Assembly: GCA_002269645.1 (NCBI GenBank)
Contig: NIVC01001537.1
Coordinates: 1-64,000, forward strand
From: Macrostomum lignano
Lineage: Eukaryota
Length of the DNA stretch: 64,000 nucleotides
Reading direction: 5' to 3'
Shown here: positions 2,764 through 51,634 of the stretch, piece by piece
How positions within the stretch are numbered: position 1 is the first letter of the stretch
Layout of the letters: each line of letters opens with the position of its first letter
Position numbers and translations under genes: made by a program
Notes under the pieces: model-generated
Seen by the model: the letters and a program-made list of their open reading frames with translations, nothing else
Told to the model about the DNA's origin: nothing
Database searches by the model: none

Positions 2764-4135
2764 GTCCTGCAGCAGTATGGGATTCTGTATGCTCCATGAG
2801 GTCCTGCAGCAGTATGGGATTCTGTATGCTCCATGAGGTCCTGCAGCAGTATGGGATTCTGTATGCTTCATGAGGTCTTACAGCAGTATGGGATTCTACA
2901 TGCTCCATGAGGTCCTGCAGCAGTATGGGATTCTGTATGCTCTATGAGGTCCTGCAGCAGTATGAGAATCTGCATGCTCCATGAGGTCTTGCAGCAGTAT
3001 GATTCTGCATGCTCCATGAGGTCTTGCAGCAGTATGGGATTCTGCATGCTCCATGAGGTCCTGCAGCAGTATGGGATTCTGCATGCTCCATGAGGTCCTG
3101 CAGCAGTATGGGATTTTGCATGCTCCATGAGGTCCTGCAGCAGTATGGGATTCTGCATGCTCCATGAGGTCCTGCAGCAGTATGGGATTCTGCATGCTCC
3201 ATGAGGTCTTGCAGCAGTATGGGATTCTGCATGCTCCATGAGGTCTTGCAGCAGTATGGGATTCTGTATGCTCCATGAGGTCTTGCAGCAGTATGAGATT
3301 CTGCATGCTCCATGAGGTCCTGCAGTAGTATGAGATTCTGTATGCTCCATGAGGTCCTGCAGCAGTATGAGATTCTGCATGCTCCATGAGGTCCTGCAGC
3401 AGTATGGGATTCTGCATGCTCCATGAGGTCCTGCAGCAGTATGGGATTTTGCATGCTCCATGAGGTCCTGCAGCAGTATGGAATTCTGCATGCTCTATGA
3501 GGTCCTGCAGCAGTATGAGAATCTGCATGCTCCATGAGGTCTTGCAGCAGTATGAGATTCTGTATGCTCCATGAGGTCCTGCAGCAGTATGGGATTCTGC
3601 ATGCTCCATGAGGTCCTGCAGCAGTATGAGAATCTGCATGCTCCATGAGGTCTTGCAGCAGTATGAGATTCTGTATGCTCCATGAGGTCCTGCAGCAGTA
3701 TGGGATTCTGCATGCTCCATGAGGTCCTGCAGCAGTATGAGAATCTGCATGCTCCATGAGGTCTTGCAGCAGTATGAAATTCTGCATGCTCCATGAGGTC
3801 CTGCAGCAGTATGGGATTCTGCATGCTCCATGAGGTCCTGCAGCAGTATGGGATTTTGCATGCTCCATGAGGTCTTGCAGCAGTATGAGATTCTGCATGC
3901 TCCATGAGGTCCTGCAGCAGTATGGGATTCTGCATGCTCCATGAGGTCCTGCAGCAGTATGGGATTCTGCATGCTCCATGAGGTCCTGCAGCAGTATGGG
4001 ATTTTGCATGCTTCATGAGGTCCTGCAGCAGTATGGGATTCTGCATGCTCCATGAGGTCCTGCAGCAGTATGGGATTCTGTATGCTCCATGAGGTCCTGC
4101 AGCAGTATGAGATTCTGCATGCTCCATGAGGTCTT
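2764..4135. repeat. 37-bp minisatellite, about 37 copies
   Basis: Unit ccatgaggtcctgcagcagtatgggattctgcatgct with few variant positions. Confidence 0.97.
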
Positions 4136-12663: not shown

Positions 12664-15600
12664 ATGAGGCTAAAAAACGCCAGCACAATCTTCATGACTT
12701 TTCTGGCTGCTTTTTGCATCCAGCTCGATGCGTCAAGCAAACTGCATCTCGCTGATGACGGCTACTATAACGACTTGCTAGTCTTTGTGCAAATACCTGC
12801 AGACGGCAACGTGCAGGAGAAGTACTATGCTCATCTACTTCATGTGCTGCAGGTGAGGCATAATGCGATATACGCTTTAATTGTGTAATATTGAAACTGA
12901 AGTCTGGGAGAATATCCAGTGCTGCTTTGACCTTTCAGACCGCCCTTCGGGAGGCCTCGGACATCTTGGAGAAGCTCACCCATACTGTGGGCCGCCGTCT
13001 CGGCTTCGGCGAGGTCAGCGTGCTGCTGCCGCACAGTCTGGGTGAGAAGCTCGCTGAATTGAACAATTCAAGGCTTCAGCTGTACCCGGCGACGTGGCAG
13101 CAGCCAGAGAACGCGGATTTCGTTGTCTCTCCAGACATCAAGGAGTCTGATGAGGGTGTCTTGAATAAAAGCATCTGTGGAGTTCAAGCAAAAATTGTAA
13201 AACTCTCGACCAAGAGCCTCGAGGCCAGCATCGTCTACAGACGTAAGAATTCTGTTGATACTTGATTAGTTAATTTTCTTGATGCTTGTCATTGAGCAGC
13301 TAGTCATTATTTTCTCCTTGAAATATTTGCATGTCAAGACAAAATATTAAGCAAATATGCGCTTATGCTACTGGACAGAGAGCAGAAAGTCAAATTAGCA
13401 CATAAAGATTGTGCAGAGTGAATCATCGAGTGTATTTAATAATGAAACTGCTCCGTAAGCAAGGATAGTCTAGTGTTCTTTCTTATCAAGCAAAATAGCA
13501 GCATACGGTATTCAAACATCTGCTACTATAGAAAACGATCAGTTCTCTATCAGTTCTCCATACAACTAAAAACATAATACTTTGCAACTTCTTCATTAGA
13601 ACTTCTAAAATTTGATAGAAAATTTAGGCTGGATTTTATGCGCATTCAGGCTGGCATCAATTGATCTAGTAGCTCTTGATTTAAAAATCAATCACGTTGA
13701 AAAAGTCCAAAAACTTAAAGAAGCCACAACTCTTCCCCATTGCTGCCACGGCTTCACTCCAATCCGCACATCCCACAGCGGTGGCCAGGACTATGGCGCT
13801 GTACTTTTCGCAGTTCCGCTGGGGCCTGTTCAGCGAAGCCCCACTGGGTGACCCGATACAGAAGAACAAGGATCCTTTTAACAGAGTTCTTCCCAGGCTC
13901 GCTTCCTGCAACCCGGACCTGCAGGTGAAGGCGGAAGTGGCCAGCGGCAATCAAACCGGACGCAGCTGCAAATTCGGCGAACCCAACTGCAAAATCGTGG
14001 TGACCGAGCCTGCGTACTCCAACGTTGCCTCGTTCCTGTTCGCGCCCTACAGCGCCGGAGTGACCCGCTTCTGCGATGCGGACTTTAAGGTCTCCGACCC
14101 CAGGCACAGGCACAACAAGGATGCCGAAAATTTACACAACAAGTATTGCCATCGACGCAGCGCTGCGGAGGTAATCAGAGACCACGAGGATTTTCTGCGG
14201 CCTATCAACTCTGCTACTACAATGAACTCGAATTTCAATGTTCGTCTGGTGGTTGAACCCAAGAGACGCCGCGTTGTGATCGTCATGGATATCTCCGGTA
14301 GCATGGATACGGTGAGAAGCCGCTTGCTTTGTCTCAGTTGCATCACTTCTTTGCCTCAATTCCATGCTGTGCTCGTTGCAACTTTGGAACCTTTCTCAAC
14401 ATTTTTGTGATCAAGAGGAATATTTTTTCAATAAGCCTTGCGCAATAGAGATGGCTCGATTAATTATTTATTGATTGATTCATTCTTACTCATTTGGATT
14501 CATTCAGGACAACCGATTGAAAAGTTTGATTGGTGCAGTGAACCATTACATTGCCTACACTCTGGAGACCGGGTCAGAGTGCGCCCTGATCAGCTTTGAT
14601 CACAATGCCACTGTGCTGCAAAATTTTATACTCGTTGACTCACCGGCTGTTCGACGTCAGCTGATGCAATCCGTCTCGAATCTGACTACAAAAGGATGGA
14701 CCTGCATTGGTAAAGCTGTTCAAGAGGCAATGAAGGTCAGTGATTTGGTCATTTAACAGATTTACGCACAGTCAGATTCTTAGACAAGCCATAGTTCAGG
14801 CGAGGTACCACTGACTGAATCCCCTACTCCTCAATCAAATAACCCAGCTGCTAGGTGAGGACCCAACAAGTCCAACCAATCGATCGAGTGGTCAGATACT
14901 TTTGGTCTCAGATGGTGAGGAAAATAAAGAATGCAGCATCGATCTGGACGCTACCATCGATGCTATAGCGAAAACAAGCCTCAGAGCTCACACCATCCGG
15001 TTCGGTGACCTGGCGGATACGCGGATGTCCATTCTTTCCGAACGCACCAATGGTCATGCGCAATTGAGTCCGGTCGTCAGCGACCTCGCAGCGTCCAAAC
15101 TAATACTGCAGATGACTTCACTCCAATCTGATCTCGCTGGCGTGAACAGTATCGTTGTTGTGAGTTAGGGTGAATTATCTTATTAAGCTTGCTCAACATG
15201 CTTTTACTACTTTCGGCTTTGAACTCTCCTTTTGATCTACATTTAGCTTGGCCTACCAACAACTTTCAATTGATCCTTGGCACCTCGGCAACCCCTCGCT
15301 TCTCCATGAGCCACAGTATTTCAGCTATCCAGCTTAACCCTAACTCTAACCTTTACAAGGTTCTTTAGGCATCTTCTATGTTTGACATGATGCATCTTTT
15401 ATACTCTATTAATTTATATAGAAAAAAATGATACATAGGAGAGAGATTAGGGCGAGAAAATTCCGATTTCTCTTCCATCTTAGTTTGACTCCGTACGAAC
15501 TGTTCCCTGTTCCCACAGCTGGATTCGAGGCAAGTTCCCTCTGACCTGCGGTATCCGGTGGAATTCGACATCGGTCCTCGCAGCAACCTCGTCTTCTCGC

Positions 15601-17268
15601 TGTTTCTGCCAAGCGATCCCGCCAAGGTTGGCTCTCTGCGCCTCATGCTTCGGTCGCCGAGCGGTAGGACTTTTAATTGCTCTGGTGGCAGCAGCACCGT
15701 TTGCACAGTCGATGTTGCAGTCGGATCCGTGACAATGCAAATTCCTGATGCTGAGGTTGAGGTGAGTTGAGTCAATTTACATGTTACCTTCTTAACATAA
15801 AAAAGAGACAGTTAGTTGTCAGTGTTTAAGAACCGCCAACTTTAGGGCTCTAAAACAATTGTAATTGGCTCGCCTCAAACCCGCCACTCCTACAGAGCGG
15901 AAAGTGGACGCTGGCGAATCTCGCAGTCGGTCTTGCACGCCGGATTCGCAGACAGGCGACCTCAAAGCTTACTATAGTTATCACAGGAAAACCAATTGTC
16001 TGGCTTCCTAAAGATTCTATCATTGAAGTGTCACCAAAAAAAGTAAAAATGGTCAAGTATGATACTTCAATCAGTGTCGACGTGTATCTGTTACCAAAAT
16101 CCCAAATTCAACACAAGTATCGCATGTACGCAGTTGTCGAAGCAGGCAACACGGAAGTGGCTCGATTTGATATTTTCGAACAACATGGCAGTGAGTAAAG
16201 ACTAAACATTTAGTAGCTGTATTAAAACTTTTTGTTTTAAACAACGATTTGAAACTCATTTTACTCACATTTTCTTCGTACAGATGAAGGAGTATACACC
16301 GCCCAGATACCACTTAATGCAGTGCATAAAGCTCGTCAATACGCTGTCACTGTGTTTGTCACGCACCCATCTCGAATGCAATTGTCTGCCGGCACTTTGA
16401 CTGTTCAGGAGGAGGACCCCAACTTTGACAAACATCGTGTAGTGCCTGAAAAAATCACAGGCACCTATATAAGTAGAAGAGAATATGCAAGCAAAATAAT
16501 TGAGATCAAATGGAATCCAGTTGAAGATCCGTCTGGTCTACTCCCGCCTAAAGCAGGTAGGTGTACCGCTCTGCTGATTGTTAAAATACAAGCTGAAGTA
16601 TGAATTTGTACAAGAAAATTTCAAGCCACTGATGCCTATGAACATTCAAATTACCTTGAACAGAAGTGCCTGTCTACAGTCTTCGTTACGAAGAATCAGG
16701 AGACAACTGCACCGATGTAAACAGCTATTACTCCTGTCCGGAACTGGCTGTCACCAACCAATCTTCGGTGAACATCTACAGCCAGTATATGGCTCTCAAT
16801 GAGCCTCCAATGTGGATAGCAGTGATTGCCATTTCCGCTGCAAACGTGCCCAGTTTGTCTAGAAGTTTATTGTACATTCAAGATAAGAAGCCCTTGGCCG
16901 CTGAAGACGAAAAGCGTTTAGGCCTACTCCCTTCCACTGTGACCAAGTCCAGCCAACGTACTAAGACTAGCATGCCATGGTATGGAGGCCACGGCACTAA
17001 GGCCAGCATGTCAGCAGCTCGCAGCAGCACTATGACCATGTTATCTAGGCCGTACAAGTTCCCCCATCTCCACCTAAATGCGCCGAAAATTTTTTCGAAC
17101 GACTCGAACAAGGCGAAGTCAACGACCAAGTTCACGGCTAATTCCATGGCCAATTCCACGACCAAGTCGTCGGCTCAACTAAATGTGGATCTGGCGTGGC
17201 TCAATGCTGGAACCGTCTGCTCTCTGGCTGTCCTCACGGTATCCGCACAGCAGTGGCTGATTCAATGA
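12664..17268 (+). CDS. CLCA-like (calcium-activated chloride channel regulator family) protein, 9 exons, about 993 aa, copy 1
   Basis: Exons 12664-12852, 12939-13242, 13779-14311, 14508-14735, 14848-15159, 15519-15761, 15896-16190, 16284-16556 and 16664-17268 have GT-AG ends and compatible phases (2982 nt in total). Signal peptide; L.DDGY, EASDIL, RWGLFSE, HNKDAENLHNKYC..RS; vWA with VMDISGS, TCIG, LVSDGE; S/T-rich stalk and hydrophobic C-terminus. Confidence 0.9.
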
Positions 17269-18439
17269 GCTCGCAGTTCAGTCAGCAGCGACATAGGAGA
17301 TGCCTTGTTGGCTCTGAGCTAATTAAAACTCACTCACTGAATAGACTCCTCATTTCATATTGACAAGTAGCCTTGGCTTCGTTCTACAGAAAATGCTATT
17401 TCCGTTCCTCTACTCGGATTCTTCAGAGACCGACGCAAGTTATTAGAGTAAGAAGTACCAATAGGAAGTAGCTAAGCTGTATTCCAATTGCTATACACTG
17501 TGATTTACGATTATCTGTACTGCAATCAAACCAAATTAGTATTCTCAAGCCTGACCCATATCGTTCATTCAGTGTATCCAATCCGCTCATTATTTGTCAT
17601 AATTTCTAAGCCAACCCAGTCAGTGTACTTAATTGCTTTGATATCGCAAATCCAATTGCTGTCAAATTATTCTATTCTTGGATCATCAAACCTGTAAATT
17701 ATTAGCTTGGACGCCAGCATTATCTGTTTTTGTACTGGCTTCGGTGTACGAGCCAAATTCTCCAAAATGTGAGTAGAGGTAGCGATAGTTTCAGTGGTAT
17801 TTTTATTTTGAATCAAGTTATTTTAATCGGGCAAAAGTGACCGGAAAATTCTCATCAACTCCGTTTTTGATGTAAAATTTAAAGCTGCGATATTGACATG
17901 ACTAATAACAATAGCTAAATATTTCAGTATGAATTTGCGCATGATTCGCAAGCGCTCAGAAAAATAAAATTACAAATACACTGTGCAGAAAATACAAAAA
18001 ATAAGCTGATCCATTTGTTTCAAACGCATTAAAACAATTGGCTTTTTAATTGTTCTTATAATGTCTGTTTGTGACCTGAAAGTAACGTACTTTACTCGGG
18101 GAAATCGGTGGTTGACAGTCGTGGCTTTTCCTTAACTATGCTATTGCTTGTACTCTAGAATAGTTGTGAGCTGAGAATAGTTGTGAATAGTTGTGAATAC
18201 TTAATGAGTTGGCTGGTGAGTTGGTGCTGTGAGACCTTGGATTTTTCGCTGAATCTTCGTCACTTAGTCCCTCCTGCATCATCAAATATAACTCTGTGCA
18301 CTTCGGTTTTGTGTGGTCTGCAAGTTTGGCACATAAAGTTCGTGAAATCTGAAGCAAACCAGTGTAAGATATGAGGCTGTCAGATATCAGCGCTGCCATG
18401 CTTCGCCGCATTTATGCTATAATTGTCAGGGACAGTGAT

Positions 18440-19040
18440 AACGCGGAAAGAAGACCACCGCGGGATCTCGCTGATGTCCTGCTCCGCGAAGCTCTTCAAC
18501 CGGCTGCTGCTCGATCGTCTGCAGTCGGTGCTAGACCCGTACCTGCGGTACGAGCAGAACGGATTCCGGCCGTAACGCGGTACAGTGACACAGATCCTCG
18601 CACTCTGCCGTGTCATCGAGGAGGCGCGCATCCGCCAGTCTACGCTGATCATAATCTTCGTTGACTTTCGAAAGGCGTTTGACTCGGTGTTGAGAGCCGC
18701 GCTTCCCTTTGTCCTTCGAGCCTACCGGGTGCCCCAGCAGCTAATCGACGCTGTCATGGCGCTGTATTGCGATACTCGAGCTGTTATGGTGACGGCGAGT
18801 GGCCTGTCTGACCTGTTCGACACTTCATCAGGAGTTCTGCAGGGCGACACGCTAGCGCCGTTCCTCTTCGTGCTGCTGCTGAACTGGGTGCTTTAGACCG
18901 CACTCACCTCGGCTAATGACGGCTTCCTGCTGCGCAGACGCCACGACGAAAAGCGCCTAAGCGTGCTTGGCTACGCCGACGACCTCGCCCTCCTGTCCTC
19001 GTCCGTTGAAGGCGCCCAGCACCAGATCGACAGGCTGGTC
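18440..19040 (+). pseudogene. RTE-type LINE reverse transcriptase fragment
   Basis: HRGISLMSCSAKLFNRLLL..QNGFRP*, IFVDFRKAFDSV, GVLQGDTLAPFLF, LGYADD; two in-frame stops; truncated at both ends. Confidence 0.92.
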
Positions 19041-19227
19041 GGTCGGCCATGAATAAAAGAACTGAAGCGGAAAAGTATGAGCAGCTAACATTTTTTTCTT
19101 CAAATATTTTCATGTCGAGACAAAACAATTAAGAAACTTGATTGAGTTAAAAAAGTCCCTCAACTTTAACAAGCCACGCTTTTCCCCATTGCTGCCACGG
19201 CTCCACCCTGATCCGCACATCCCACAG

Positions 19228-22200
19228 CGGTGGCCAGGACTATGGCTCTGTACTTTTCGCAGTTCCGCTGGGGCCTGTTCAGCGAAGACCCATTGAGTAA
19301 CCCGATACAGAAGAGCAAGGATTCGTATAACAGAGTTCTTCCCAGGCTCTCTTCCTGCAACCCGGACCTGCAGGTGAAGCTGGAAGTGGCCAGCGGCAAT
19401 CAAACCGGACGCAGCTGCAAATTCGGCGAACCCAACTGCAAAATCGTGGTGACCGAGCCTGCGTACTCCAACGTTGCCTCGTTCCTGTTCGAGCCCTACA
19501 GCGCCGGAGTGACCCGCTTCTGCGATGCGGACTTTAAGGTCTCCGACCCCAGGCACAGGCACAACAAGGATGCCGACAACTTACTCAACAAATTTTGCAA
19601 TGCACGCAGCGCTGCGGAGGTCATCAGAGACCACGAGGATTTTCTACGGCCTATCAGCTCTGCTACTATAGTGAACTCAAAGTTCAACTTTCGTCTAGTG
19701 GTTGAACCCAAAAGAGACCGTGTTGTGATCGTCATGGATACATCGAGTAGCATGCGTTCGGTGAGAAGCCGCTTGGTTTGTCTCAGTTGCATCACTTCCT
19801 TTCCATGCTCTGCTCTTTGTAACTTTGTAACCTTTTCAAATTTTTGGGATCAAGTGGAAGAGTTTTTTCATAATGACATGCTCAAAAGAGGTGACTATAT
19901 TTATTCAATTAAAAAGTCAATTTCAAAAGTACACAAAGATTACTATCCACCAATAACTCATTCTAACTCATTTTGGACCCATTCAGGACAACCGAATGCA
20001 AAATTTGATTAATGCAGTGAACAATTACATTGCCTTCACTCTGAAGACCGGGTCAGAGTGCGCCCTGATCAGCTTTACTAGCGGACCCACTGTGCTGCAA
20101 AATTTCATCCTGGTTGACTCACCGGCTGTTCGACGTCAGCTGATGCAATCCGTCTCGAAACTGACTGCCGGAGGAAGCACCTGCATCGGTGGAGCTGTTC
20201 AAGAGGCTATGAAGGTCAGTGATTTGGTCATTTAACAGATTTACGCACAGTCAGATTCTTAGTCAAGCCATAGTCCAGGTCAGGTACCACTGATTGAATC
20301 CCCTACTTCTCAATCAAATCACCCAGCTGCTAGGTGAGAACGTAACAAGTCCAACTCATCGATCGAGTGGTCAGATACTTTTGGTCTCAGATGGTCAGGA
20401 AGGCTGCAGCAGCAAGCTGAACTCTACCATCGATGCGATATCGAAAACGAGCCTCAGAGTCGACACCATTCGGTTCGGTGACAGTGCGGACATGCGGATG
20501 TCGCTTCTTGCCGACGTCACGGACGGTCGCAAGCTATATAGTCCGGTCGACAGCAAGCTTGCAGCGTCCAAACTAATACTGGAGTTCACCTCACTACAGT
20601 CTGGTCTCGCTGGCGTGAACAAGACCGTCGTCGTGAGTTGGGGTGAATTCTATTGTGAAGCTTGCTCGACAAAAATTTATTACTTTTCGCTTCTTTCACC
20701 ATCTATTATTGTATTCATCGACAACAGCCAAATTCTTTTTGTCTGAGTAAGGGTTTAAGTCTGCTGTTGACCGTGGGATAAAATTCTCAGGGGGCCGTGA
20801 AAGCCAAAACGTAGTAATGCATTATGTTACTTAATTATTGAAGCAAATAAAGTGTCTTCTTAACACTAGCAATAAGCAGCCTTTCACTTTTTACAGTCGC
20901 TATTGTTATTATCCCAACGTAAATGATGTTTTAACGTAACGTAAAAACTCTGAAAGCCAGCTATTATATCAGGCTAAGATATCAGGACCCTCTTTGAGCT
21001 TTAGCTCTCATTTTGATCTACCTTTATTTTGCTTACCAAGTATCGGTCGAAATTAAAAATGAAAGTTTAAATTTTAAATTGATAAGTAAAATAAAGGAGA
21101 GAGGATGCAAAAGATGGAAAATACGCGAGGGAGAGATGGAGGAGAGATGATATAGAGATAGGGGAGAAATGGGTGAGATTAGAGCTCCAATGAGATCCTG
21201 CAGCATTATGAAAATATGCTCAACGGGATTCTTCTGAAATCAGTCACATAACCTACTTAAGCGACAAACTATTTTTAGTGTTGTGTCTAGTTAAGTTACT
21301 AAATAAATCAAATGCGCTTAGGTAGTGCACTGGTTGCATTCCGATTGTCTTCCATCTTAGTTTGACTCCGTACGAACTGTTCCTTGTTCCCACAGCTGGA
21401 TTCGAGGCAAGTTCCCTCTGACCTGCGGTATCCGGTGGAATTCGACGTCAGTACTCGCAGCAACCTCGTCTTCTCGCTGTTTCTGCCAAGCGATCCCGCC
21501 AAGGTTGGCTCTCTGCGCCTCATGTTTCGGTCGCCGAGCGGTAGGACTTTCAATTGCTCTGGAGGCAGCAGTGCCGTTTGTACAGTTGATGTTGCAGTCG
21601 GATCCGTGACAATGCAAATTCCTGACGCAGAGGTAGAGGTCAGTTGAGCCAATTTACGTGCCAAAGCAAAAAGCCAATATTTTAACAGCTACTGTAACAG
21701 TGTGTTACTAAATTCTAAATATGCTCTTTCAGGAGCAAAAAATTCGAAATGGGGGGTATAGTTTAGGCAGTTAATTACGAGTACTAAGAACCGTCAACTT
21801 TAAGGATTCCCAAACAATAGTAACCCGCCACTCCAACAGAGCGGAAAGTGGACGCTAACGAATCTCGCAGTCGGTCTCGCACGCCGGATTCGCAGACAGG
21901 CGGCCTCAACAATGACTATAGTTATCACAGGAAGACAATTTGCCTTACTGCCCAGAGATACTACGTGTAGGGTGAAGCCAAATAATGTGACAATGGTCAA
22001 GTATGATACTCGAATCGGTGTCTTCGTGAACCTGTTACCAAGATCCCAGATTCAACACAAGTATCAAATGTACGCAGTTGTCACAGCAAGCAACAAGGAA
22101 GTGGCTCGATTTAATCTATCTGAACAATATTACAGTAAGTGAAGACTAAAAATTCAGTAGCAGCTTTACAAAAACTATTGTTGTTAAACAGCGATTTAAA

Positions 22201-23283
22201 AGGCATATTGCTCATACTTCATTTGTACAGATAGAGGAGCATACAGTGCCATGGTACCACTCTATGCAGTACAGAAAGCTCGTCAATACGCTGTCGATGT
22301 GTTTATCACGTTCCCGTTCCAAATGCAATTGTCTGGCGGCACCTTGACTGTTCAGGCGGAAGACCCCAACTTTGACAGACGTCGTATTGTTCCTAAGCCA
22401 AGCATGGCGATCTATATAAGCAGAAAAGATTATGCGAGTAAAATAATTGAGATCAAATGGAATCCAGTTAAAGATCCGTCTGGTCTACTCCCGCCTAAAG
22501 CAGGTAGGTGTAACGCTTGAAGCAGCTCTGCTAAAGTACAAGCTGAAATGTGAATTTTATTGAAAAATATTTTTTCATAAAACCAAAACACATTTTGGCA
22601 TCTGGTTCAAAGAGCAAACAGTGCCCCAAATACGAGTATTTGTTGCACAGCTGTCATGCACATTTCACTCTTTTTAACGCTCATGTTCATCCGAATTGAC
22701 TCCAACAGATGTGCCTGTCTACAGTCTTCGCTACAGAGAAACAGGTGGAAACTGCACCGCTGTAAACGGATATTACTCCTGTCCGGAACTGGCTGTCACC
22801 AACCAATCTTCGTTGAACATCTACAATCAGTATATGGCTCTCAATGAACCTCCGATGTTTATAAAAGTGATTGCCATATCCGCTGCAAACGTGTCCAGTG
22901 TGTCTATCGATAGATTGTACATTCAAGATGAGAAGCCCTTGGCCGCTGAAGACGAAAAGCGATTAGGCCTACTCCCTTCCACTATGGCCAGAACATTGAC
23001 CAGCGTGACAAACCATAAGTTCAGTATGCCCATACGCAATGTACATATTGTACATCATACGCAGACCACCAAACAATTGACTTCGCACGTCCACCGGACC
23101 GTGGCGCAAACTTTGGCAAATGACCCGAACAAGACCAATTCCACGGCCAAGTCGTCGTCACGAAACTCGACGCAGACGAAATCGTCGGCTCAACTAAAGA
23201 TGGATCTGGCGTGGCTCAGTGCTGGAGCCGTCTGCTCTCTGGCTGTCCTCACGGTATCTGCACAGCAGTGGCTGATCCAGTGA
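19228..23283 (+). pseudogene. CLCA-like tandem copy 2, lacking exons 1-2
   Basis: Exons 3-9 are collinear with copy 1 (starts at 19228, 19987, about 20327, about 21396, 21840, about 22231, 22709; stop at 23283). Homology to copy 1 begins inside intron 2 (about 19075), directly after the RTE fragment. The 3' flank 23284-24075 matches 17270-18130. Confidence 0.82.
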
Positions 23284-24549: not shown

Positions 24550-26650
24550 AGGGGGGTTCCGTCCGGGCTGATGGCTTTGGAGAGCTTGGACCGCTTGATG
24601 GCATGCTCGATGCCATCGGCCGAACAGACAGGAGCGTCTCCGGCGGCGCGAGGTAGGGCCTTAATACGTCGACGGACGACACGCATCTGCGGGTTGGAGC
24701 AGTGAAGGCGCGGCCTCGTGAACTGACAATTGAGCCGGTCCGCAGTTTCGGCACCAGAAAGGGCCGGTTTTTCGTTGAACTTTAGTATGACATTTTATCT
24801 GCGTTCGGGCGTCTGGCCAGCTTTTTAAAAGTGGACCAGATCCTGGGCTGGTTGCCGTTCTCAAGGAGGAATTTGCTTCAGCGGTCCCGTTTCTCCGCTT
24901 CGAGGCTCGAATTGATTTGCGCTTGTAGGTCCGACGGGTCCGACGGGTTATTGGTGCGGAGGGTATCGAGATCCCTGCGGTCTGGAAGAAGTCCTTAATC
25001 TGTCCCCTTCTGAAAGATGGCAAACCGCAGGACGATGGCGCGTCGTACCGCCCGATCTCCTTCCTGTCGCCGCTCGCCAAAATCTTGGAGAAGATCCTGC
25101 TACCGCTTCTGACTGACCATCTTCAGCTTCCTGCCTGGCAACATGGCTTCCGCCCGCACCACTCAACCATGACCGCCCTCTGCCAACTGGTCGAGCAGAT
25201 TTGCTCGGGATTCTGCCTGTCGAAACCCCCGGCCAGGACCGGCGTTGGCGCGATCGACCTTCGGATGGCGTTTGACTGCGTTGACCATTACAAATTACTC
25301 TCCGACCTCGCCGAATCGGATCTTCCGAACTCTGTTAAGGCCTGGCTCGCCAACTATATTCTTGGACGACAAGCCCGGACCTTCATGCGAGACTCTAAGT
25401 CCAAGTGGCGGCAGGTTCGCATTGAAGTACCACAGGGCAGCGCCATCAGCCCGCTTCTTTTCGCCTTTTATCTGGCTAAGGCTCCCGTGCCCATCAATCC
25501 GACTACTAAGCTAATCGGCTACGCTGACGATCTTACCGTTGCCGCCTCGTCCCCAAGCTGCAATTCCATTGAACAACAACTGGATCATTATCTCGCTGAA
25601 CTCGCTCCGTTCCTCGAGTCGCGCAAGCTCCAGAGTTCTACATCAAAGTGTACGGCCACTCTGTTCAGTCCAGACCAGCGCGAATACTTCTGCCAGCTTA
25701 ATGTCTTCATAAACGGCTCCCCACTGCCGCAGGTCCTCCATCCGAAAACTCTGGGCGTGACTTCGACCCCAAACTCTCCTTCGCGAGACACGTCTCCATC
25801 TTTGTGGAGAAAACCCGGAAAAGAAACAGCCTGCTACGTTGCCTCGCCGCCTCATCCTGGCTGCTGCAAGGAACTTTTGCTGACACCTTTAAAGCTCTTG
25901 GCAGAAGTCTGCTCGACTACACTGCGCCGGTCTGGGGCCCATCATCTCGAACTCGTCCTGGACTCGGCTTCAATCGGTCGAGAATGCGGCGAGTCGCAGC
26001 ATCACCGGCTGCACAGCCCTTACCTCTGAAACGGATCTACACAGTGAAGTTCAGTTGCTCACCGTCCGCCAACACAACCAGCTCCTTTCGCTCCAGTTCA
26101 AGCTCCGCACCAGACGCCCGGAACATCCATGCCACCATCTTTCCTGTCTGCCACCTCTGCGTAGACTCATGAAAGCCTCCATCTTCACTGCTGAGCATTT
26201 TAACGCCGATTGGGTGCCGGTTCCGGCCCCGGATGTCCTTGACGCTGGCTGCAGCCTGGTATCGCGCCAAGCGGGCCCAACACACGCAGGCACTATAGGC
26301 CATGCTGGACAGTTTGCCACCGAACCGCGTCATTCGTGCGCAACGATCTGAGATCCACCGCTCCGAAGTTCGCCTCCCCGCCGTGTGCGGTGCACGCTGG
26401 CGCAGCTTCGCTCCGGTTTCTGCCTGTTTCTCCGAGACTTTTTTTTATTCGAGGCTCAACCCTGGCGTCGCCGCGGTTTGTCCTGATTGCGGCGGCCTTG
26501 AGCCCCAAACGGTGGCCCACCTCTTCAACTGCCCTGCGCCTATCTGACGCAGCTTTGTCCGAGTGACTTATGGACTAACCTGATAGAGACGTGCACCTTT
26601 CTGAAGTCGGCCGCCCTCGGCGGGCTGGGACCCCGGTTGTAGGTTAACAC
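24550..26650 (+). mobile_element. Non-LTR retrotransposon (I/Jockey-group-like), 5'-truncated with inverted 5' segment
   Basis: Plus strand from about 24955: IPAVWKKSLICPLLKDGK...YRPIS, QHGFR, IDLRMAFD, VPQGSAISPLLF, YADD, KTLGV, then a frameshifted C-terminus with LAQLRSG and CPDC..HLFNC. The minus strand at 24550-24950 holds the pre-RT segment ending SADGIEHAIKRSKLSKAISPDG. Confidence 0.9.
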
Positions 26651-27341: not shown

Positions 27342-27661
<320 letters not shown>

Positions 27662-27760
27662 TCCCTCCATGCCAAGACAAAAGCAACAGAACTTGCAACA
27701 ACAAAAAAGAAAAGAAAAACCCAACACCCAAAAAAACTGTCAGTCACTGTCAGATCAAGT

Positions 27761-30700: not shown

Positions 30701-30853
30701 GGTCCGCTCGAGCTCAGGAGCCCCGCCCAGCAGGTCGTGATAGGCTCTAGCCGATATCAGCGATACCGCCGCGCCCGTGTCGATCTCCATCTGGCAGGAC
30801 ACTCCGTTGAGCAGGACCGTGGTGATGTACGGCGGTACCCTGGGCAGCTGCAC
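27761..30853 (-). pseudogene. pol: Gypsy protease-pol (PR, RT, RNase H, integrase)
   Basis: MEIDTGAAVS (protease), in-frame TAG at 30671-30673, then a 960-aa frame with FTKLDLSQAY, RLPFG, FIDD, CDSSPYGVGAV, DHKPL, HQSHQG..C..C, HMDYAGP, YHPSSNGLAER. Confidence 0.95.
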
Positions 30854-31676
30854 TGGGCAAGGTGTTCAGGGAGCCGCAGTCTTGGCTTTCCTCCTCCACA
30901 GCGGCGACTTGCGACCGCGGCTCAGCTCCAGCCGAATCCGCGCCTCCTCGACAGGCTGCAGCGGTGTGCCCCATCTTGCCGCACTTGAAACAGGCCTTCT
31001 TCATGAATGGGCACTTCGCCGCCAGGTGTTTCGCTGACAGACACCTGTAGCACCTTTTCGCAGGTCGCTGAGTCGCTACCGCATTTGTCTGGCCGACTTG
31101 GTCTACCGATGCTGCCGAGGCGGTTTGCGGGGTTCCTGAGGACGAGCCCTTGACCAAGTTGCAGCCCTTGGTTGCCAGCTCCACCGCCTGGGAGATCGCC
31201 AGTGCTCTGTCCAGGTCCAACTCTGTCTCGGACAGGAGTCTGCGCTGTATGCGATCATCCTGGATGCCAAGCACCAGACGATCTCTCAGCATGGTACTCA
31301 AACTGTTACCGAAGTTGCAGTGGACAGCCAAACGCCGCAGTGCCGCCAGGAAGTCGGCCACGGACTCCGAGCTCTCTCGAACGCGCTGGTAGAAGTGGAA
31401 CCTTTGCACGATCTCTGACGGCTTTGGGTCCCAGTGATCGTCAAGCTTTTTGCAGATGTTAGCGAAGGAAGCCTCTGAAGGCTTAACTGGGGCCAGAAGA
31501 CTGGTGACAAGCCTATAGGTGTCCTTGCCGCACACGCTGAGGAATACCGCTCGCTTCTTCTCTTCGCTTTCGATTTCGTTTGCAATGAACACTTGTTCAA
31601 TGCGCTCCTTTTATTGCGACCAGTCCTCCGTCTCAGGCTCAAACGGCCCTATGCTACACAGTGGCCCAGTGGCCAT
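30747..31676 (-). pseudogene. gag: Gypsy gag (Mag type) with two CCHC knuckles
   Basis: ATG at 31676 (MATGPLCSIGPFEPETEDWSQ*), premature TAA at 31611-31613, MLRDRLVLGI, CYRCLSAKHLAAKC and CFKCGKMGHTAAAC; shifted relative to the protease frame near 30850. Confidence 0.92.
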
Positions 31677-31687
31677 CCTCGTCGCCA
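31673..31687 (-). promoter_or_regulatory. Primer-binding site complementary to the tRNA-Ser(GCU) 3' end
   Basis: TGGCGACGAGGATGG, one base after the 5' LTR, is complementary to ...CCAUCCUCGUCGCCA of tRNA-Ser(GCU) (sequence recalled). Confidence 0.85.
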
Positions 31688-31688
31688 G

Positions 31689-31986
<298 letters not shown>

Positions 31987-41576: not shown

Positions 41577-41945
41577 TATTTATTTTCTTTTATTAGAGGC
41601 AGGGGGGTTGTGTGCACCCTGGCGAACTTTAGGCGACATAGGCACACAACCGGCGAGAGGCATTACTGCCCATTCCGCCGACTCCCCTGAGCAGGCATAC
41701 AAGCGCGCGGATACGTTACGCAGGCACACACTCACACAGGAGTGTACAGCGGCCCTAACTTTATATTATCGTAAGGCATGTACACTTCACTGCGCCTTGG
41801 GGGGTGGCTCTCAAGGCCGTTAATTGCACAAGCGAGCCAAGCCGAAATTCCAATTCAGCCCCAAATTAATGTGGCTGCACTTGGAATCGAGCCTGGGTCG
41901 CTGGCACACCAGAGCAGCTGCGCTACCGCTGGACTACGGCCCCCT
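41577..41945 (-). mobile_element. tRNA-derived SINE (about 370 bp) with 13-bp TSD
   Basis: Head 41944-41872 ggggccgtagtccagcggtagcgc...ggctcgattccaagtgcagcca (A box TAGTCCAGCGG, B box GGCTCGATTCC); A-rich tail; tagattaaccgat at 41564-41576 and 41946-41958. Confidence 0.9.
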
Positions 41946-42639
41946 TAGATTAACCGATAGGAGCACACGACTTCGATTCCGTTAGTTCTAGAAGAAGACG
42001 CCCTTTCTGGAGGACCTCGTATTGAAGATGATTTTGTTTTTAGGGCGCATCGTTGATATTGATTTCGGCACTCGAGAAAATACTGCGACGTCGATTTAAT
42101 TGTTACGCTCTCACTTTCGGCCGATTCTAGACTTCAAGAAGACCACCCCGGGAGGAACAGCTCTAAGGAGACGAGCTCTACAGGCACGCGCGACAAAGAA
42201 GAGGAGCCCGCAACAGTAAGTGATCACTGATTTTGTTCCCAGGCTTAAGTGTCTGGAAGTGGGAGTTTTCGGGTGACTGATCACCGCCCGACCAAACTCT
42301 TCATCAGAGCTCAAAAACATCTGATTGGCCTCAAAATTTAGTCGCAGTTGCAATTTTGACTTTTTCGCTGTGCACCACAAATGCACAAATTTTGGTCTAA
42401 TGGTTCCTTCCAAGTTAAAAGTCCGAATTCAACTGCTCAATTTCTCAAATTCAATGCTCTCCCCATACACCGCTTTGGCCATAGACAATCTTCGGGTTGA
42501 ATGGGTTCAATAAATATGGTTGGACGCATGGTAGACAACCCCCATTGTCAGTTTTGGAAAACTTTATCAGAATATGTTTCTAGCAGTAGATACGTCTGAA
42601 CTGTTTTTTCCTACAAAGTATAATAAAAGTACACAGCGC

Positions 42640-44065
42640 ACCTCTATGCTCTTATCAGGAACTTTTACAGTCGCCGTTCTCGCCGCCGATTCGAATGTGC
42701 AGACGGCGCTGTTGCCAGCCGAGCAGTTGAACTCTTTGCCACTGGGCGAGCGAAGCTCCAGGCGCAGCTTGCCGGGCAAGAAGGACTCGCCGGGGAAAAA
42801 CAGCCAGAAGACCAGATCATGACGAACCGACGCGTCTATTCGGAACTGCAACGGACGATGAAAGTCAAGCGAAACCGTCTGCGAAGCCAGCTGCGGAATC
42901 AGAAAAAAAGCAAACAGCACCCTTTACATTCGTAAGATAACATCTAGATTCCGGCATTAGGAGATGACCATTTTTTGCATTAGGGCGACAAAGTACTGAA
43001 ATAATGGATACAATTTTTCAATTGGAAGACAACGGTGCAACTTTGCACCTGTTCACTATCCCCAGTCCCAAGTGCCAACAATCTCAAAGAGACACACGCC
43101 CAAGGTTCTCAGACTCAACCAATGAAGAAACAAACACGAACGTACAGCGACGGTCTCATTAGCCCAAGCCGTGTCAGACGAGGTCGCTAGCAAAGACAGT
43201 GTCAAATCCAAAGCCGCCAGTCCACTAGTGGTTACCGGACCAAAGAACTGCTGGCCGCCAGTGACTTCAGAAAGACGCGACATCCGCATGTCCGCCTGAT
43301 CACCGAAGCGAATGGTGTCAACCTTGAGGCTCGTCTTCGATAGAGCGTTGATTGCAGAGTCCAGTGCACCGCTGCAGATTTCCTCACCGTCTGAGAACAG
43401 AACTATCTGACCAACTGAGTTACGAGTCGGACTCTTTGGGTCCTCGCCTAGCACCTGGATGTTTGTTGGTGTGCGGGGCGATTCACGAATCATGATCCAA
43501 GCCGAAAGATTATTTAAATTTAGCCGCTTACCGCCATCGCCAGTAGAGCAGCGGCACCAATGCATGTATCACCACTTGGTCTCAAACTCATAACGGACTT
43601 CACCAACCGCTCTCGAATCACGGCCGAGTCAACTTTCACTAAATTATGCAAAACGTTGGCCTTGATGTCAAAAAAGATCAAGGCGCACTCGGAACCAGTC
43701 TCGAGCTGGAACCTCAAGTAGTGAATCACTGTGGCGATCATGTTGTAAAACCGGCTCTCCTAAAAAAGATAAGCAGCACGCAGAAATGTTTTAAAATAAA
43801 CGAAATGAGAACAGTAAGTAGGGCTGAGAGTGGTGTACATGTACGTGTACGAGCTTGTAGGATGAATCAAAACGAAAAAAGGGATACATTCTGCTTACAT
43901 GTCCCATGCTTCCAGACATATCCATGGCAATCACGACTCGTTGCTTGTCAGGTTCGACCACCAGTCGAAAGTTGATCTTCGACTTAGTCGAAACGGCAGA
44001 GCTGATTTGTTGAAAATCTCTGTGCTCTCGAATGACTTCTGCCGCGCTGCGTCCCCCGCAATACC
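42640..44065 (-). pseudogene. CLCA-like copy 3 (inverted, diverged fragment: end of exon 3 to exon 6)
   Basis: RSAAEVIREHRDF...VVIAMDMSGSM, ETGSECALIFF...DTCIG, GQIVLFSDGEE...DTIRFGD, LRSPSGKEFNCS, with the same intron positions as copy 1. Cut at a poly-C tract near 44070. An intron-2-like sequence recurs at about 46040-46200. Confidence 0.85.
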
Positions 44066-46339
44066 TGCCCCCCCCCCACTCCTGTCAGATGGTCAGCCCC
44101 ATGGTAGCTTGATCGTGTGGCGAGCAGTCTAGGTCCTATAGCTAAGAGAGGGACAGCGAGAGACAAGCAGGGAGAATTTTGAAGGTAGAGATCAGCTAAT
44201 CCGCAGATTAACTAACCCGCTGCCACCAGCCCGTGCGTCCTGGCTGACCAAACCGGAACTTTCGAAATCGGGCTTCCGACTATAGAGGGGGCTTAGCACT
44301 TACCTGCCAACTAGTGTCTTTCTGCTGTCAATCTCGAAGTCATAGCCGATGATAAGGGACACTGCTGGGACTAGATCGCATTGGCCATGCAGGTACAGAG
44401 GGGACTTGTGCAGTGGATTCTTGCAGTGGCGAGACTATGGGGTAGCTACATGTACTATTACATTGCTAAATACGAGGAATTGCACTTTTGGACTTCAACG
44501 CACCGACCAGCCTCTCGTAGCGCTGATGATAGGCTAACTCGAACTTCAGAGGCCGCATGATTCATTACCCGAGCCGCTTGGCGAACCTAGAGTGCACAGA
44601 GTACATCTCTAGCGCCGATTTTGCACTATTGGCAATTTTGCTCACTGATTTGATAGATTGATCGACTGAGAACTGTCTTGCCATTGGTCCACTGTGACCG
44701 GCGCCTACTAGCTTAGCCACTCATCTGAGCCATCGGCGAACAAAAAAATAAAACAAATAAAAATAACTGTCAGATTTAACCTTCTCACTGATTCACTTAA
44801 CACCTCAGATTGAATTGGTGTTTCAGACTACTAATTCAATATTATTGAATGATTTCTGCCTCGATTACAGCACTGCTGAACAAAATGAGCAAAAGTGTGC
44901 GCCTAATCCAGCTACTGAAACAGGGGACAGATAAGGGATCACCCAATCAAGCAAGTCTAGGTAGGCTCTCACCAAACCAATCAGAAACTCAACAGTCGGA
45001 GACCAGGTAATCCGCAGTGACCGAATCGGCTTAGTGCTTTGCAGCTGTAGACTCGGGATGATGCTGATGTCACAATCTTCGCAGATAGCTAGCATGTGAT
45101 GCTCTTCACTTTGATGTTCACTGCTGATGACCGGGGGAATTCGTCCTTGATGATGATGGGGGGAGTTGCAATCCGCGGATCAAGAAACGACGGTCAGGCC
45201 AGAGAGAGAGCAAGTTCCTGGCCGGTCTCCAGAAAGGGTTTGCAGGGGTTGAACCGGTTGAAGCCCGAGCGGGCCAAAAACACCGGTTTAAATAGCCGCC
45301 AACTGGACCGCAGTTTGTTATAATGGAACACCTCGACGCTGATTGGCTGAGCCGATTTGTTATAACTGACGTCGAATTTTCTGATTGGCTGAGCTTTTTG
45401 CCACCCAAACTCACGTGACCAGATGATCCTATTAGTTCCCTCGGGGCCATAAAAATACGCCAGGTGCAGTCATAACTCACTCAAAATCGCTACATAATGA
45501 TTTATGACCATTCGCGTAGGAGTTACAAAAATCAATGAAAAAATATGCATTGGAAAGATCTTATTAAGTAGTAGGTGAAGATGGTGAAGAGAAATCGCTA
45601 ATCGCTAATCCCAAATCTGGCACCAGCCTCAACACTGAGCGAGGCGCAGGTGGCTGTCAGACCAGCTCAAAAGCAATGATTTATGACCCCAAAAGTAGCA
45701 AAAGCTGCGCCTATGTTATTATAACTACAAGTACGGCAAAATCATATAGCTACAAAAATCCTACTAGTATGAATTCTAGAAAAACTACACAAAAAGGCGA
45801 AAAATGCCCATAGCCGGCTGTCAGTAGGCTAGCAAGTTTAGAGCCCGTGTGCGAGCGTGAGATTTGGAAAAAAGTGCGTCCTCATCACTATCTTTTAAAC
45901 TTCAGTACGCTGCCTCGTTTACCATTAGCAGTGGATTAAATTTTCCCGAGCAAGGCTACTTTTTCTAACGAATTACAATTCTCCTATTGATTACTGTTAG
46001 CGAGGTCATCCCAGCTTAGGTCACTGCCAATCACAGATACTAAATACCCTAGATGGTTCACTCAGCCCTATCTGGATGTATCAATTTGACTGGCTACTCT
46101 CTGTTCAGTAGTATAAGCGCATTTATTTTTATTTTTGACTCGACATGAAAATATTTGGAGAAAATGATGATTAGCTGCTGGCTCATATCACATGCAAGCA
46201 ATTTTTCCCCTTTAACTCTTTTATCTTGGAATGTGGATAGCATTTCAAGTTCATATCTTATTCATCCATCGACACGCTGTTGGAGTTCAGCTGTAATTTT
46301 AGAGTCGATTAGGTACGATTGGTAAAAGCACCTTGAGAA

Positions 46340-48425: not shown

Positions 48426-48959
48426 CACCTTTACTAAACACGGCAAATATACGACCCCTAACCGGCCCCAGCTCAATTCTGAGAAAACCGAGTTTAGCGT
48501 CCGTCTGCTTCAGTTTTTCAACGGTTTATCTGCATTAAAATTATTTTCATACAAATTTGGAGGTGCCACATAAAATACTGCGAACTGCAACTTACCAATG
48601 GGAATAATAAAACGAAGAATATTATACTTTGATAAAATATTTATGACCGTAGGATTACGAGTTCGTCAGCAGTTCCAAGATAATTCTCCTGTCGAGTTCG
48701 GAGCGCGGCCGAGATTCGAGACACTGCGGACGCCGGAAGCTAAACTCGATCGATCTATCAGTCTTTCTATCAGTAGTCTCAGAAGTTTTAGCTTCTCCCC
48801 GATCCCGGATAAAGATGCTAATTATTAATACGAGCCAAGTCTGCAGTTGAAAACTGCAATTTGCACAATGCGACCGTGGGGTTGCTTTCACAAACAGGAA
48901 ACTCCTCTCTCTTTCTCTCTATCAGTAGTCTGATATCTAGTAGTACTCGATCTACTCTA

Positions 48960-50884: not shown

Positions 50885-51634
<750 letters not shown>

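What the first reader, a model, noticed from the sequence alone, without database searches (positions are those of the whole stretch)
13779..13840. CLCA paralogs are predicted pseudo-proteases: HExxH replaced by LYFSQ
CLCA proteins have GR.FVHEWAHLRWGVFDE, where the two His and the downstream Asp bind Zn and the Glu is catalytic for self-cleavage. Here the aligned segment is ARTMALYFSQFRWGLFSE (LYFSQ at 13799-13813), so all three ligands and the Glu are lost, while RWG.F.E, the cysteines and the vWA DxSxS MIDAS are kept. Copy 2 has the same change (19248-19262). Copy 1 is otherwise an intact 993-aa gene, which suggests a functional, catalytically dead, vWA-centred CLCA subfamily (inference).
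Basis: partly seen in the sequence, partly recalled or inferred. Interest (0 to 1): 0.72.

Follow-up and report, generated by a model that had tools for sequence, protein, structure and literature searches.

The report
Catalytically dead CLCA genes in a flatworm
These Macrostomum lignano flatworm genes encode CLCA-type surface proteins that have lost the zinc protease site and the loop it would cut, but are still kept by selection; inactive CLCA variants are already known, so this is a well-documented new example, not a new kind of protein.

Summary
Window 13784-13837 and 19233-19286 both translate to ARTMALYFSQFRWGLFSE. LYFSQ (13799-13813) aligns in register with HEWGH/HEWAH of about 100 CLCA homologues. 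Against human CLCA1, the three catalytic zinc ligands (H156, H160, D167), the general base E157 and the Met-turn methionine are replaced by L, Q, S, Y and L. The second, structural zinc site (C187, C250, H255, E168) and the VWA MIDAS are kept.

The window is Macrostomum lignano DNA. Copy 1 is an intact 9-exon, 993-codon gene. Copy 2 has only exons 3-9, all open. A third, P0004-like fragment lies on the minus strand.

New here:
- The roughly 50-residue loop that carries the CLCA autocleavage site is deleted in the whole clade.
- At least four diverged M. lignano paralogue lineages share the dead site and group together in the tree. Their nearest relative there is a canonical HEWGH paralogue from the same genome.
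- dN/dS is 0.41 between copy 1 and its 44%-identical paralogue.
- AlphaFold2 gives a confident metzincin-like fold.

CLCAs with substituted catalytic sites were described in 2013, so I file this as a new member of a known kind. The binding function through the VWA domain remains an inference.

The parts
12664..17268 (+). Copy 1: complete CLCA-like gene of 993 codons in 9 exons: 12664-12852, 12939-13242, 13779-14311, 14508-14735, 14848-15159, 15519-15761, 15896-16190, 16284-16556, 16664-17268 (stop included).
   Evidence: All introns are GT-AG and the frame is open. The protein is 100% identical over its aligned part to UniRef A0A1I8J6R9 of Macrostomum lignano. The DNA of 13338-19041 is identical to GenBank contig NIVC01002494.1, where a CLCA/VWA gene is called.
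12664..12732 (+). Probable signal peptide (aa 1-23, MRLKNASTIFMTFLAAFCIQLDA).
   Evidence: Read from the sequence. A hydrophobic N-terminus is also present in P0004. This is an inference; no signal-peptide predictor was run.
13799..13813 (+). LYFSQ in place of HExxH. L172 replaces His156, Y173 replaces the general base Glu157, and Q176 replaces His160 (human CLCA1 numbering).
   Evidence: The roles of the human residues come from the cryo-EM preprint.
13832..13840 (+). S183-E184-A185 in place of D167-E168-Y169. The third zinc ligand Asp is lost, the Glu is kept, and the stabilising Tyr is lost.
14036..14038 (+). L251 at the position of the Met-turn methionine (human M238).
13907..14113 (+). 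Residues of the second (structural) zinc site are retained: C208 (13907-13909), C263 (14072-14074) and H276 (14111-14113), matching human C187, C250 and H255.
   Evidence: They are invariant in 14 and in 30 aligned CLCAs. The human site is described.
14288..14913 (+). VWA domain with a complete MIDAS: D335-x-S337-x-S339 (14288-14302), T407 (14700-14702) and D440 (14911-14913).
   Evidence: Pfam VWA_2 on exon 4 scores 26.9 bits (E 8.1e-6), just under its 27-bit cut-off. phmmer matches the human CLCA1 VWA structure 6PYO. Foldseek's top hit is 6PYO, TM 0.90.
16361..16387 (+). THPSRMQLS (aa 728-736): all that remains where canonical CLCAs carry the 24-75-residue inhibitory loop with the autocleavage site.
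   Evidence: Alignment. Length count against 73 homologues with an intact H-E-H-D. The loop's role is described.
16936..17265 (+). Ser/Thr-rich stalk (about 32% S+T) followed by a hydrophobic C-terminal end (aa 969-993). It looks like a GPI-anchor signal or a membrane anchor.
   Evidence: Composition and coordinates. The anchoring mode is an inference.
19228..23283 (+). Copy 2: equivalents of exons 3-9 only: 19228-19760, 19987-20214, 20327-20632, 21396-21638, 21840-22134, 22231-22503, 22709-23283. There are 817 open codons. It has the same LYFSQ (19248-19262) and a MIDAS reading DTSSS.
   Evidence: DNA homology with copy 1 begins at 19146, inside the counterpart of intron 2. tblastn finds no exon 1-2 equivalent.
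42304..44067 (-). Copy 3: fragment of a P0004-type dead CLCA paralogue. Exon matches at 42642-44066 cover aa 288-605 at 94-97% identity. It does not include the motif region.

Best explanation
Copy 1 encodes a secreted, probably membrane-tethered, CLCA-family protein whose metalloprotease (MH) domain is a pseudo-enzyme. The fold and the structural zinc site are kept. The catalytic zinc site (2 His + Asp), the general base Glu, the Met-turn Met, and the C-terminal loop that canonical CLCAs cut in themselves are all gone. The protein therefore cannot self-cleave and should stay a single chain.

It belongs to an expanded clade of such genes in Macrostomum lignano. In the distance tree the nearest relative of that clade is a canonical HEWGH paralogue that is still present in the same genome, and the dead genes have since been kept by purifying selection.

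The likely working part is the intact VWA MIDAS, which would bind a ligand in a metal-dependent way. The dead MH domain would serve as a scaffold or a non-catalytic binding surface. This last step is an inference.

Copy 2 in this window is a partial tandem duplicate of the same type (exons 3-9).
For: Shown:
- The motif and its register.
- The identity of the human catalytic residues and of the second zinc site.
- No HExxH elsewhere in the proteins or the window.
- The cleavage loop is reduced to 9 residues, against 24-75 in 73 intact homologues.
- The dead site is shared by diverged paralogues: P0004 has LHFSQ, P0007 LFFSQ, P0183 LYFSQ and P0013 RELSI, all from M. lignano.
- The canonical paralogue P0029 (BOX15_Mlig024754g1) has HEWGH, the Asp, the Met and the loop.
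- In a neighbour-joining tree the four M. lignano dead lineages are monophyletic at 99% bootstrap, and P0029 is sister to the dead clade at 61%.
- dN/dS of copy 1 against P0004 is 0.41 (CI 0.33-0.50). The MH domain alone gives 0.41 and the VWA 0.37.
- The replacement residues L, F, S, Q and S are themselves conserved between paralogues whose dS is about 1.2.
- The AlphaFold2 model of the MH domain has pLDDT 90.6 and pTM 0.89, and a helix carries LYFSQ. Its 16 best PDB matches are all adamalysin, ADAM or ADAMTS catalytic domains.
- The VWA best matches the human CLCA1 VWA.
- The GenBank models of these genes derive from RNA-seq assemblies.
Against: - No direct expression, protein or activity data were examined for copy 1.
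- The Foldseek matches for the MH domain are weak (best E 4e-3, TM 0.39).
- dS between copy 1 and P0004 is near saturation, so the dN/dS value is approximate.
- dN/dS between copy 1 and copy 2 is higher, 0.66 (CI 0.52-0.83), which shows relaxed constraint since that duplication.
- Bootstrap support for a single origin that includes P0012, and for P0029 as sister, is only 61%.
- The binding role of the VWA and the membrane anchoring are inferred, not tested.
Confidence: 0.8

Rival explanations
1. The copies are decaying pseudogenes, and the lost catalytic residues are just part of neutral decay.
For: Copy 2 lacks exons 1-2 and so has no signal peptide. Copy 3 is a truncated, rearranged fragment. 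The region is full of retroelements. dN/dS of copy 1 against copy 2 is a relaxed 0.66.
Against: Copy 1 has 993 open codons and nine canonical introns. The dead site is shared by paralogues only 44% identical that are also intact. dN/dS of 0.41 excludes 1. The cysteines, the structural zinc site and the MIDAS are invariant. Even copy 2 keeps 817 open codons at dS 0.24, its dN/dS excludes 1, and it has not evolved faster than copy 1 (31 against 33 lineage-specific changes).
Confidence: 0.05
2. The protein is still a protease or hydrolase that uses a non-canonical metal site or different catalytic residues.
For: The fold, the Gly-turn and Glu184 (human E168) are kept, as is the second zinc site. 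Gln and Ser side chains can in principle touch a metal. P0013 and P0012 keep the Glu of HExxH.
Against: All three ligands, the general base, the Tyr and the Met-turn Met are replaced at once. Leu172 cannot bind a metal. No HExxH or reversed motif exists anywhere in the protein. The protein's own cleavage loop has been deleted.
Confidence: 0.05
3. The dead site is an artefact of gene modelling: the true transcript uses another exon that carries HExxH.
For: The public UniProt models of this locus are inconsistent with each other. They skip part of exon 7, and one fuses copy 1 with copy 2.
Against: All public models include the LYFSQ exon. The exon 2/3 junction is in phase and uses GT-AG. A six-frame scan of the 64 kb finds no CLCA-like HExxH. 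The same motif recurs in independent paralogues on other contigs.
Confidence: 0.02

Closest known systems
Human and mouse CLCA1 (self-cleaving 'CLCAsin' metzincin with a VWA domain)
   Same: Same domain order: MH domain, VWA, beta-sheet-rich region, FnIII-like domain. It matches Pfam CLCA_N. The VWA best matches structure 6PYO. The Gly-turn RWG, Glu168, the cysteines, the structural zinc site C187/C250/H255 and the MIDAS are conserved.
   Different: H156, E157, H160, D167, Y169 and M238 are replaced by L, Y, Q, S, A and L. The inhibitory loop with the G694/A695 cleavage site is deleted. The C-terminus is an S/T-rich stalk with a hydrophobic end, whereas CLCA1 is secreted.
CLCA_N proteins with substituted catalytic sites (Lenart et al. 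2013, PMC3650047)
   Same: This is exactly the published phenomenon. About 72% of CLCA_N domains carry HExxH, the rest have non-random substitutions, and at least five independent losses were inferred. I see further cases in ticks, Aplysia, Daphnia, sea urchins, a crab, bowfin, gar and a pearl oyster.
   Different: That paper does not mention flatworms. The clade here has also lost the Asp ligand, the Met-turn and the whole cleavage loop, and it has expanded into many paralogues beside a canonical one. Those features were not described there.
Catalytically inactive ADAMs (for example those with LQxxL or HQxxH in place of HExxH)
   Same: They are metzincin-fold pseudo-proteases on the cell surface that kept their non-catalytic binding domains. 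Lenart et al. cite them as the best-studied precedent. The MH model here best matches adamalysin and ADAM folds.
   Different: They belong to a different metzincin family (M12B). Their binding modules are disintegrin and Cys-rich domains, not a VWA.
M. lignano canonical CLCA paralogue BOX15_Mlig024754g1 (P0029)
   Same: Same species and same architecture. It is sister to the dead clade in the distance tree.
   Different: It keeps HEWGH, the Asp, the Met-turn Met and a 46-residue loop.

Membership tests
CLCA family (Pfam PF08434 CLCA_N + VWA) | Significant match to the CLCA_N profile | tested here: met
   37 bits against the 25.6-bit cut-off, E 3.5e-9, for copy 1; 37.4 bits for copy 2. Precomputed PF08434 hits on P0001 and P0004.
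CLCA family (Pfam PF08434 CLCA_N + VWA) | VWA domain directly after the N-terminal domain, then beta-rich and FnIII-like regions | tested here: met
   Full-length alignment to named CLCA regulators from sea urchin, amphioxus, hemichordate and vertebrates. The CLCA1 VWA structure is the top sequence and fold match.
Active CLCA metzincin protease ('CLCAsin') | HExxHxxxGxxD zinc-binding motif with a general-base Glu | tested here: not met
   The sequence is L-Y-F-S-Q-F-R-W-G-L-F-S. Only the Gly is kept.
Active CLCA metzincin protease ('CLCAsin') | Met-turn methionine under the active site | tested here: not met
   Human M238 aligns to L251. P0004, P0013 and P0012 also have Leu, while P0007 keeps Met.
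Active CLCA metzincin protease ('CLCAsin') | C-terminal inhibitory loop that carries the autocleavage site | tested here: not met
   9 residues remain, against 24-75 in 73 homologues with an intact site. This is the shortest of 102 sequences.
Active CLCA metzincin protease ('CLCAsin') | Second (structural) zinc site Cys-Cys-His | tested here: met
   C208, C263 and H276 align to C187, C250 and H255 and are invariant. Actual metal binding cannot be tested with these tools.
Active CLCA metzincin protease ('CLCAsin') | Metzincin fold of the N-terminal domain | tested here: met
   The AlphaFold2 model has pLDDT 90.6. Its top 16 PDB matches are adamalysin, ADAM or ADAMTS catalytic domains, but they are weak (best E 4e-3, TM 0.39).
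VWA domains with a functional MIDAS | DxSxS ... T ... D metal-ion-dependent adhesion site | tested here: met
   D335, S337, S339, T407 and D440. The first four are invariant and the Asp nearly invariant in the 14-sequence alignment. Copy 2 has DTSSS, T and D.
Pseudo-enzyme kept by selection (as opposed to a pseudogene) | Intact reading frame and dN/dS below 1 after loss of the catalytic residues | tested here: met
   993 open codons. dN/dS of 0.41 (CI 0.33-0.50) against P0004, which shares the loss.
Pseudo-enzyme kept by selection (as opposed to a pseudogene) | Expression of the gene | tested here: inconclusive
   The evidence is only indirect. The GenBank BOX15 gene models, including the one on DNA identical to copy 1, come from a genome-guided RNA-seq assembly that discarded novel transcripts below 0.5 RPKM. 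No reads were examined.

The most novel reading that the evidence does not exclude
The Macrostomum clade may be a natural 'uncleavable and dead' CLCA. It has jointly lost the catalytic zinc site, the Met-turn and the autoinhibitory cleavage loop, but kept the structural zinc site and the MIDAS, and it has expanded beside one canonical paralogue. If so, it may have a new, protease-independent job. That could be cell-surface adhesion or receptor function, or acting as a partner or decoy for the active paralogue. Either way it would be a ready-made system to separate the proteolytic from the binding functions of CLCAs.
Probability: 0.3. Interest if true: 0.5.

Novelty: new member of a known kind. 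Interest (0 to 1): 0.35.

Why it matters
In vertebrates it is still debated how much of CLCA biology (mucus processing, regulation of TMEM16 channels) needs the protease and self-cleavage, and how much is binding through the VWA domain. A whole clade that evolution has stripped of both the protease site and its own cleavage loop, while conserving the rest, shows that the non-catalytic part is worth keeping on its own.

Macrostomum lignano is a transgenic, RNAi-amenable laboratory animal, so the question can be tested there.

It also adds a practical caution for annotation. Several substituted-site homologues in other animals are labelled 'calcium-activated chloride channel regulator' in the databases, yet they are unlikely to be proteases. 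The M. lignano proteins themselves are labelled only 'VWFA domain-containing' or hypothetical.

Tried and rejected
1. The word-indexed homologue search gave too few hits to be useful: 4 with the protein and 12 with a 14-sequence profile. The exhaustive profile search was used instead.
P0001 and P0004 stood in for it.
3. The sequence search of the PDB found only the CLCA1 VWA domain. The Foldseek PDB copy also returned no full-length CLCA1. So no residue-level structural superposition of the dead site on a solved CLCA active site was possible.
4. hmmalign with trimming lost the loop region for most hits. This was replaced by a full-length MAFFT alignment.
5. The first bootstrap run crashed on saturated distances and was rerun with a cap.
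6. I could not identify the organism behind P0012, a transcript-like contig of run SRR30276804.
7. I considered that copy 2 is decaying faster than copy 1. The relative-rate count is even, 31 against 33, so I rejected that.
8. I considered an alternative HExxH exon and rejected it.
9. Literature searches for 'pseudoprotease' with CLCA found nothing. The search for Macrostomum with CLCA found only a gene-ontology table.
Full report
**Observation.** Bases 13784-13837 give ARTMALYFSQFRWGLFSE, 13799-13813 give LYFSQ, and 19233-19286 give the same 18 residues. Base 13779 is the first base of an exon that follows a CAG acceptor. I rebuilt the gene by hand. The products of both copies of this exon match Pfam CLCA_N (PF08434) above the curated threshold.

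**Source.** The protein is 100% identical over its aligned parts to UniRef entries of the free-living flatworm Macrostomum lignano. Window 13338-19041 is base-for-base identical to GenBank contig NIVC01002494.1 of assembly GCA_002269645.1.

**Is LYFSQ really the HExxH position?** A two-sequence profile (P0001 plus its 44%-identical paralogue P0004) was searched against 1.84 billion representative proteins. It found 330 relatives at E <= 1e-10. Those looked up by name are 'calcium-activated chloride channel regulator' proteins of sea urchins, amphioxus, a hemichordate, fishes, molluscs and arthropods. In the HMM alignment LYFSQ lies under HEWGH/HEWAH, with the following RWG(L/V)F.E conserved. 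Of 102 full-length sequences that can be aligned, 73 have H, E, H, D at the four catalytic columns.

It was checked in two ways. All 18 residue/number pairs named in the cryo-EM preprint agree with it. A tool-derived vertebrate homologue, P0141, which is 59% identical, sits in the same alignment. The preprint shows that His156, His160 and Asp167 hold the catalytic zinc, Glu157 is the general base, Tyr169 stabilises the site and Met238 forms the Met-turn. A second, tightly bound zinc is held by Cys187, Cys250 and His255.

The mapping in copy 1 is:
- Lost: H156 to L172, E157 to Y173, H160 to Q176, D167 to S183, Y169 to A185, M238 to L251.
- Kept: G164 (G180), E168 (E184), C187 (C208), C250 (C263), H255 (H276).

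So the catalytic site is entirely gone, while the structural metal site and the cysteine framework are kept. These residues are invariant in a 14-sequence and a 30-sequence alignment that mix dead and canonical proteins.

No HExxH occurs anywhere in copy 1, P0004, P0007, P0013 or P0012. No CLCA-like HExxH exists in any frame of the 64 kb.

**A second, linked loss.** In canonical CLCAs the segment between the strand '...RYSVKVRA' and 'FSRT..GG.F' is the inhibitory loop. It lies in the active site and carries the autocleavage bond, Gly694/Ala695 in human CLCA1. In copy 1, P0004, P0007, P0013 and P0012 this segment is missing. Counted on a 118-sequence alignment, 9 residues remain, against 24-75 (median about 45) in the 73 homologues with an intact site. 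That is the shortest of all 102. Enzyme and substrate have been lost together, which is what one expects if self-cleavage was abandoned.

**Fold.** AlphaFold2 on the MH domain alone (30-sequence alignment) gives pLDDT 90.6 and pTM 0.89. A helix at model residues 140-156, which is copy 1 residues 163-179, carries LYFSQ. Its 16 best PDB matches are all adamalysin, ADAM or ADAMTS catalytic domains. The scores are weak (best E 4e-3, probability 0.94, TM 0.39). The cryo-EM authors likewise report closest similarity to M12 proteases. The full-length model (pLDDT 69) best matches the crystal structure of the human CLCA1 VWA domain, TM 0.90. The MIDAS residues D335, S337, S339, T407 and D440 are all present.

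**A family, not an accident.** M. lignano has many such genes:
- copy 1 type: LYFSQ
- P0004 / BOX15_Mlig028759g1: LHFSQ
- P0007: LFFSQ
- P0183 / BOX15_Mlig006068g1: LYFSQ
- P0013 / BOX15_Mlig010915: RELSI

P0012 (YEFGQ) comes from a transcript-like contig of an unidentified sample.

The same genome keeps a canonical paralogue, P0029 / BOX15_Mlig024754g1, with HEWGH, Asp, Met and a 46-residue loop. In a neighbour-joining tree of the MH and VWA domains (453 columns, 103 sequences) the four M. lignano dead lineages are monophyletic at 99% bootstrap. With P0012 support drops to 61%, and P0029 is their sister, also at 61%. The pattern suggests stepwise decay. The zinc ligands and the loop were lost at the base of the clade. 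The Glu is still present in P0013 and P0012 and was lost later, in the copy 1 / P0004 / P0007 group. This ordering is an inference from parsimony.

**Selection.**
- Copy 1 against P0004 (901 codons): dN 0.50, dS 1.23, dN/dS 0.41, bootstrap 95% CI 0.33-0.50. The MH domain gives 0.41 and the VWA 0.37. dS is close to saturation, so the ratio is approximate.
- The replacement residues L, F, S, Q and S are themselves conserved between these paralogues.
- Copy 1 against copy 2 (813 codons): dS 0.24, dN/dS 0.66, CI 0.52-0.83. Intron divergence is about 0.19.
- With P0004 as outgroup the two copies have changed equally, 31 against 33.

**Expression.** Evidence is indirect. The GenBank BOX15 models were generated from a genome-guided RNA-seq assembly (PMC5730564), and such a model covers DNA identical to copy 1.

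**Copy 2 and copy 3.** Homology between copy 1 and copy 2 starts at 13696 and 19146, 83 bases before exon 3. tblastn finds no exon 1-2 equivalent between the two genes. All seven remaining exons have canonical splice sites and 817 open codons. A copy-2-type gene on another contig (P0180, BOX15_Mlig016365g2) does have exon-2-like sequence upstream. So the truncation is a property of this locus or haplotype. Whether copy 2 here is expressed, and from which 5' end, is open. Copy 3 (42304-44067, minus strand) is a fragment of a P0004-type gene, covering aa 288-605, and does not reach the motif.

**Mechanism (inference).** The protein has a signal-peptide-like N-terminus, an S/T-rich stalk and a hydrophobic C-terminal end. 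It is probably displayed on the cell surface as an uncleaved single chain. With the protease dead and the MIDAS perfect, its activity is most likely metal-dependent binding through the VWA domain. The MH domain would be retained for folding or as a binding surface. This resembles how catalytically inactive ADAMs are thought to work, a comparison also drawn by Lenart et al..

**Comparison with what is known.** Lenart et al. 2013 (PMC3650047) already reported three things. About 72% of CLCA_N domains carry HExxH. Substituted sites are non-random. The active site was lost at least five times independently. My hit list shows further substituted lineages in ticks, Aplysia, Daphnia, sea urchins, a crab, bowfin, gar and a pearl oyster. 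Flatworms are not mentioned in that paper. I found no paper on Macrostomum CLCAs beyond a gene-ontology table.

Three things are new here. This is a further lineage. The inhibitory cleavage loop and the Met-turn were lost together with the catalytic site, while the structural zinc site was retained; that could only be recognised after the 2025 structure. And the clade has expanded beside a canonical paralogue.

**Verdict.** This is a new member of a known kind, of moderate interest.

Noticed in passing
window 17269-19228: Copy 2 starts inside the counterpart of intron 2: homology with copy 1 begins at 19146. It has no exons 1-2, yet it keeps seven exons with canonical splice sites and 817 open codons. 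Its 5' end (own promoter, read-through from copy 1, or trans-splicing) is unknown. A copy-2-type gene on another contig (P0180, BOX15_Mlig016365g2) has exon-2-like sequence upstream.
   Followed up: partly
window 13338-19041 versus L001 1-5704: The window is 100% identical to GenBank contig NIVC01002494.1 over 5.7 kb and then diverges abruptly at 19041. In that contig copy 1 is followed in tandem by the complete P0004 gene instead of copy 2. This looks like structural variation between duplicated genome blocks or haplotypes.
   Followed up: partly
window 41584-44067, minus strand: A fragment of a P0004-type dead CLCA gene (aa 288-605, 94-97% protein identity). It is cut off inside exon 3 at 44067, and a neighbouring piece (41584-41945) lies in the opposite orientation relative to the intact gene.
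   Followed up: partly
window 27486-31931, minus strand: A Ty3/gypsy-type LTR retrotransposon. It has a 960-aa pol ORF (reverse transcriptase, RNase H, integrase) at 27761-30643 and a gag-like ORF with a zinc knuckle at 30747-31592. Pure (GA)n tracts lie on both sides, at 27486-27606 and 31833-31931.
   Followed up: partly
window 18585-18896 and 25085-26029: Two further reverse-transcriptase fragments (Pfam RVT_1). One lies between copy 1 and copy 2, the other downstream of copy 2.
   Followed up: no
window 53157-55430, minus strand: A Frizzled-type receptor gene (Fz domain plus 7TM region). It reads as two abutting ORFs, 54066-55430 and 53157-54065, separated by a stop. Profile positions 165-223 are missing between them. 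This could be an intron or a disrupted gene.
   Followed up: no
window 2764-4133; 48959-50175; 52011-52912; 59762-60470; 47697-48381; 51030-51630: Several long tandem arrays: a 37-mer x 37 (which produces spurious long ORFs on the minus strand), a 42-mer x 29, a 34-mer x 26, a 19-mer x 37, and CT-rich low-complexity tracts.
   Followed up: no
UniRef models P0001, P0002, P0003 of this locus: The public protein models disagree with the exon structure supported by the paralogues. P0001 and P0002 carry a 52-aa upstream extension and skip most of exon 7. P0002 also skips exon 8. P0003 fuses copy 1 with copy 2 into one chimeric protein.
   Followed up: partly
L002 (Logan contig of run SRR30276804): A 2973-nt transcript-like contig with an uninterrupted 907-codon ORF. 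It encodes the most basal member of the dead clade (YEFGQ, short loop). The source organism could not be identified.
   Followed up: partly
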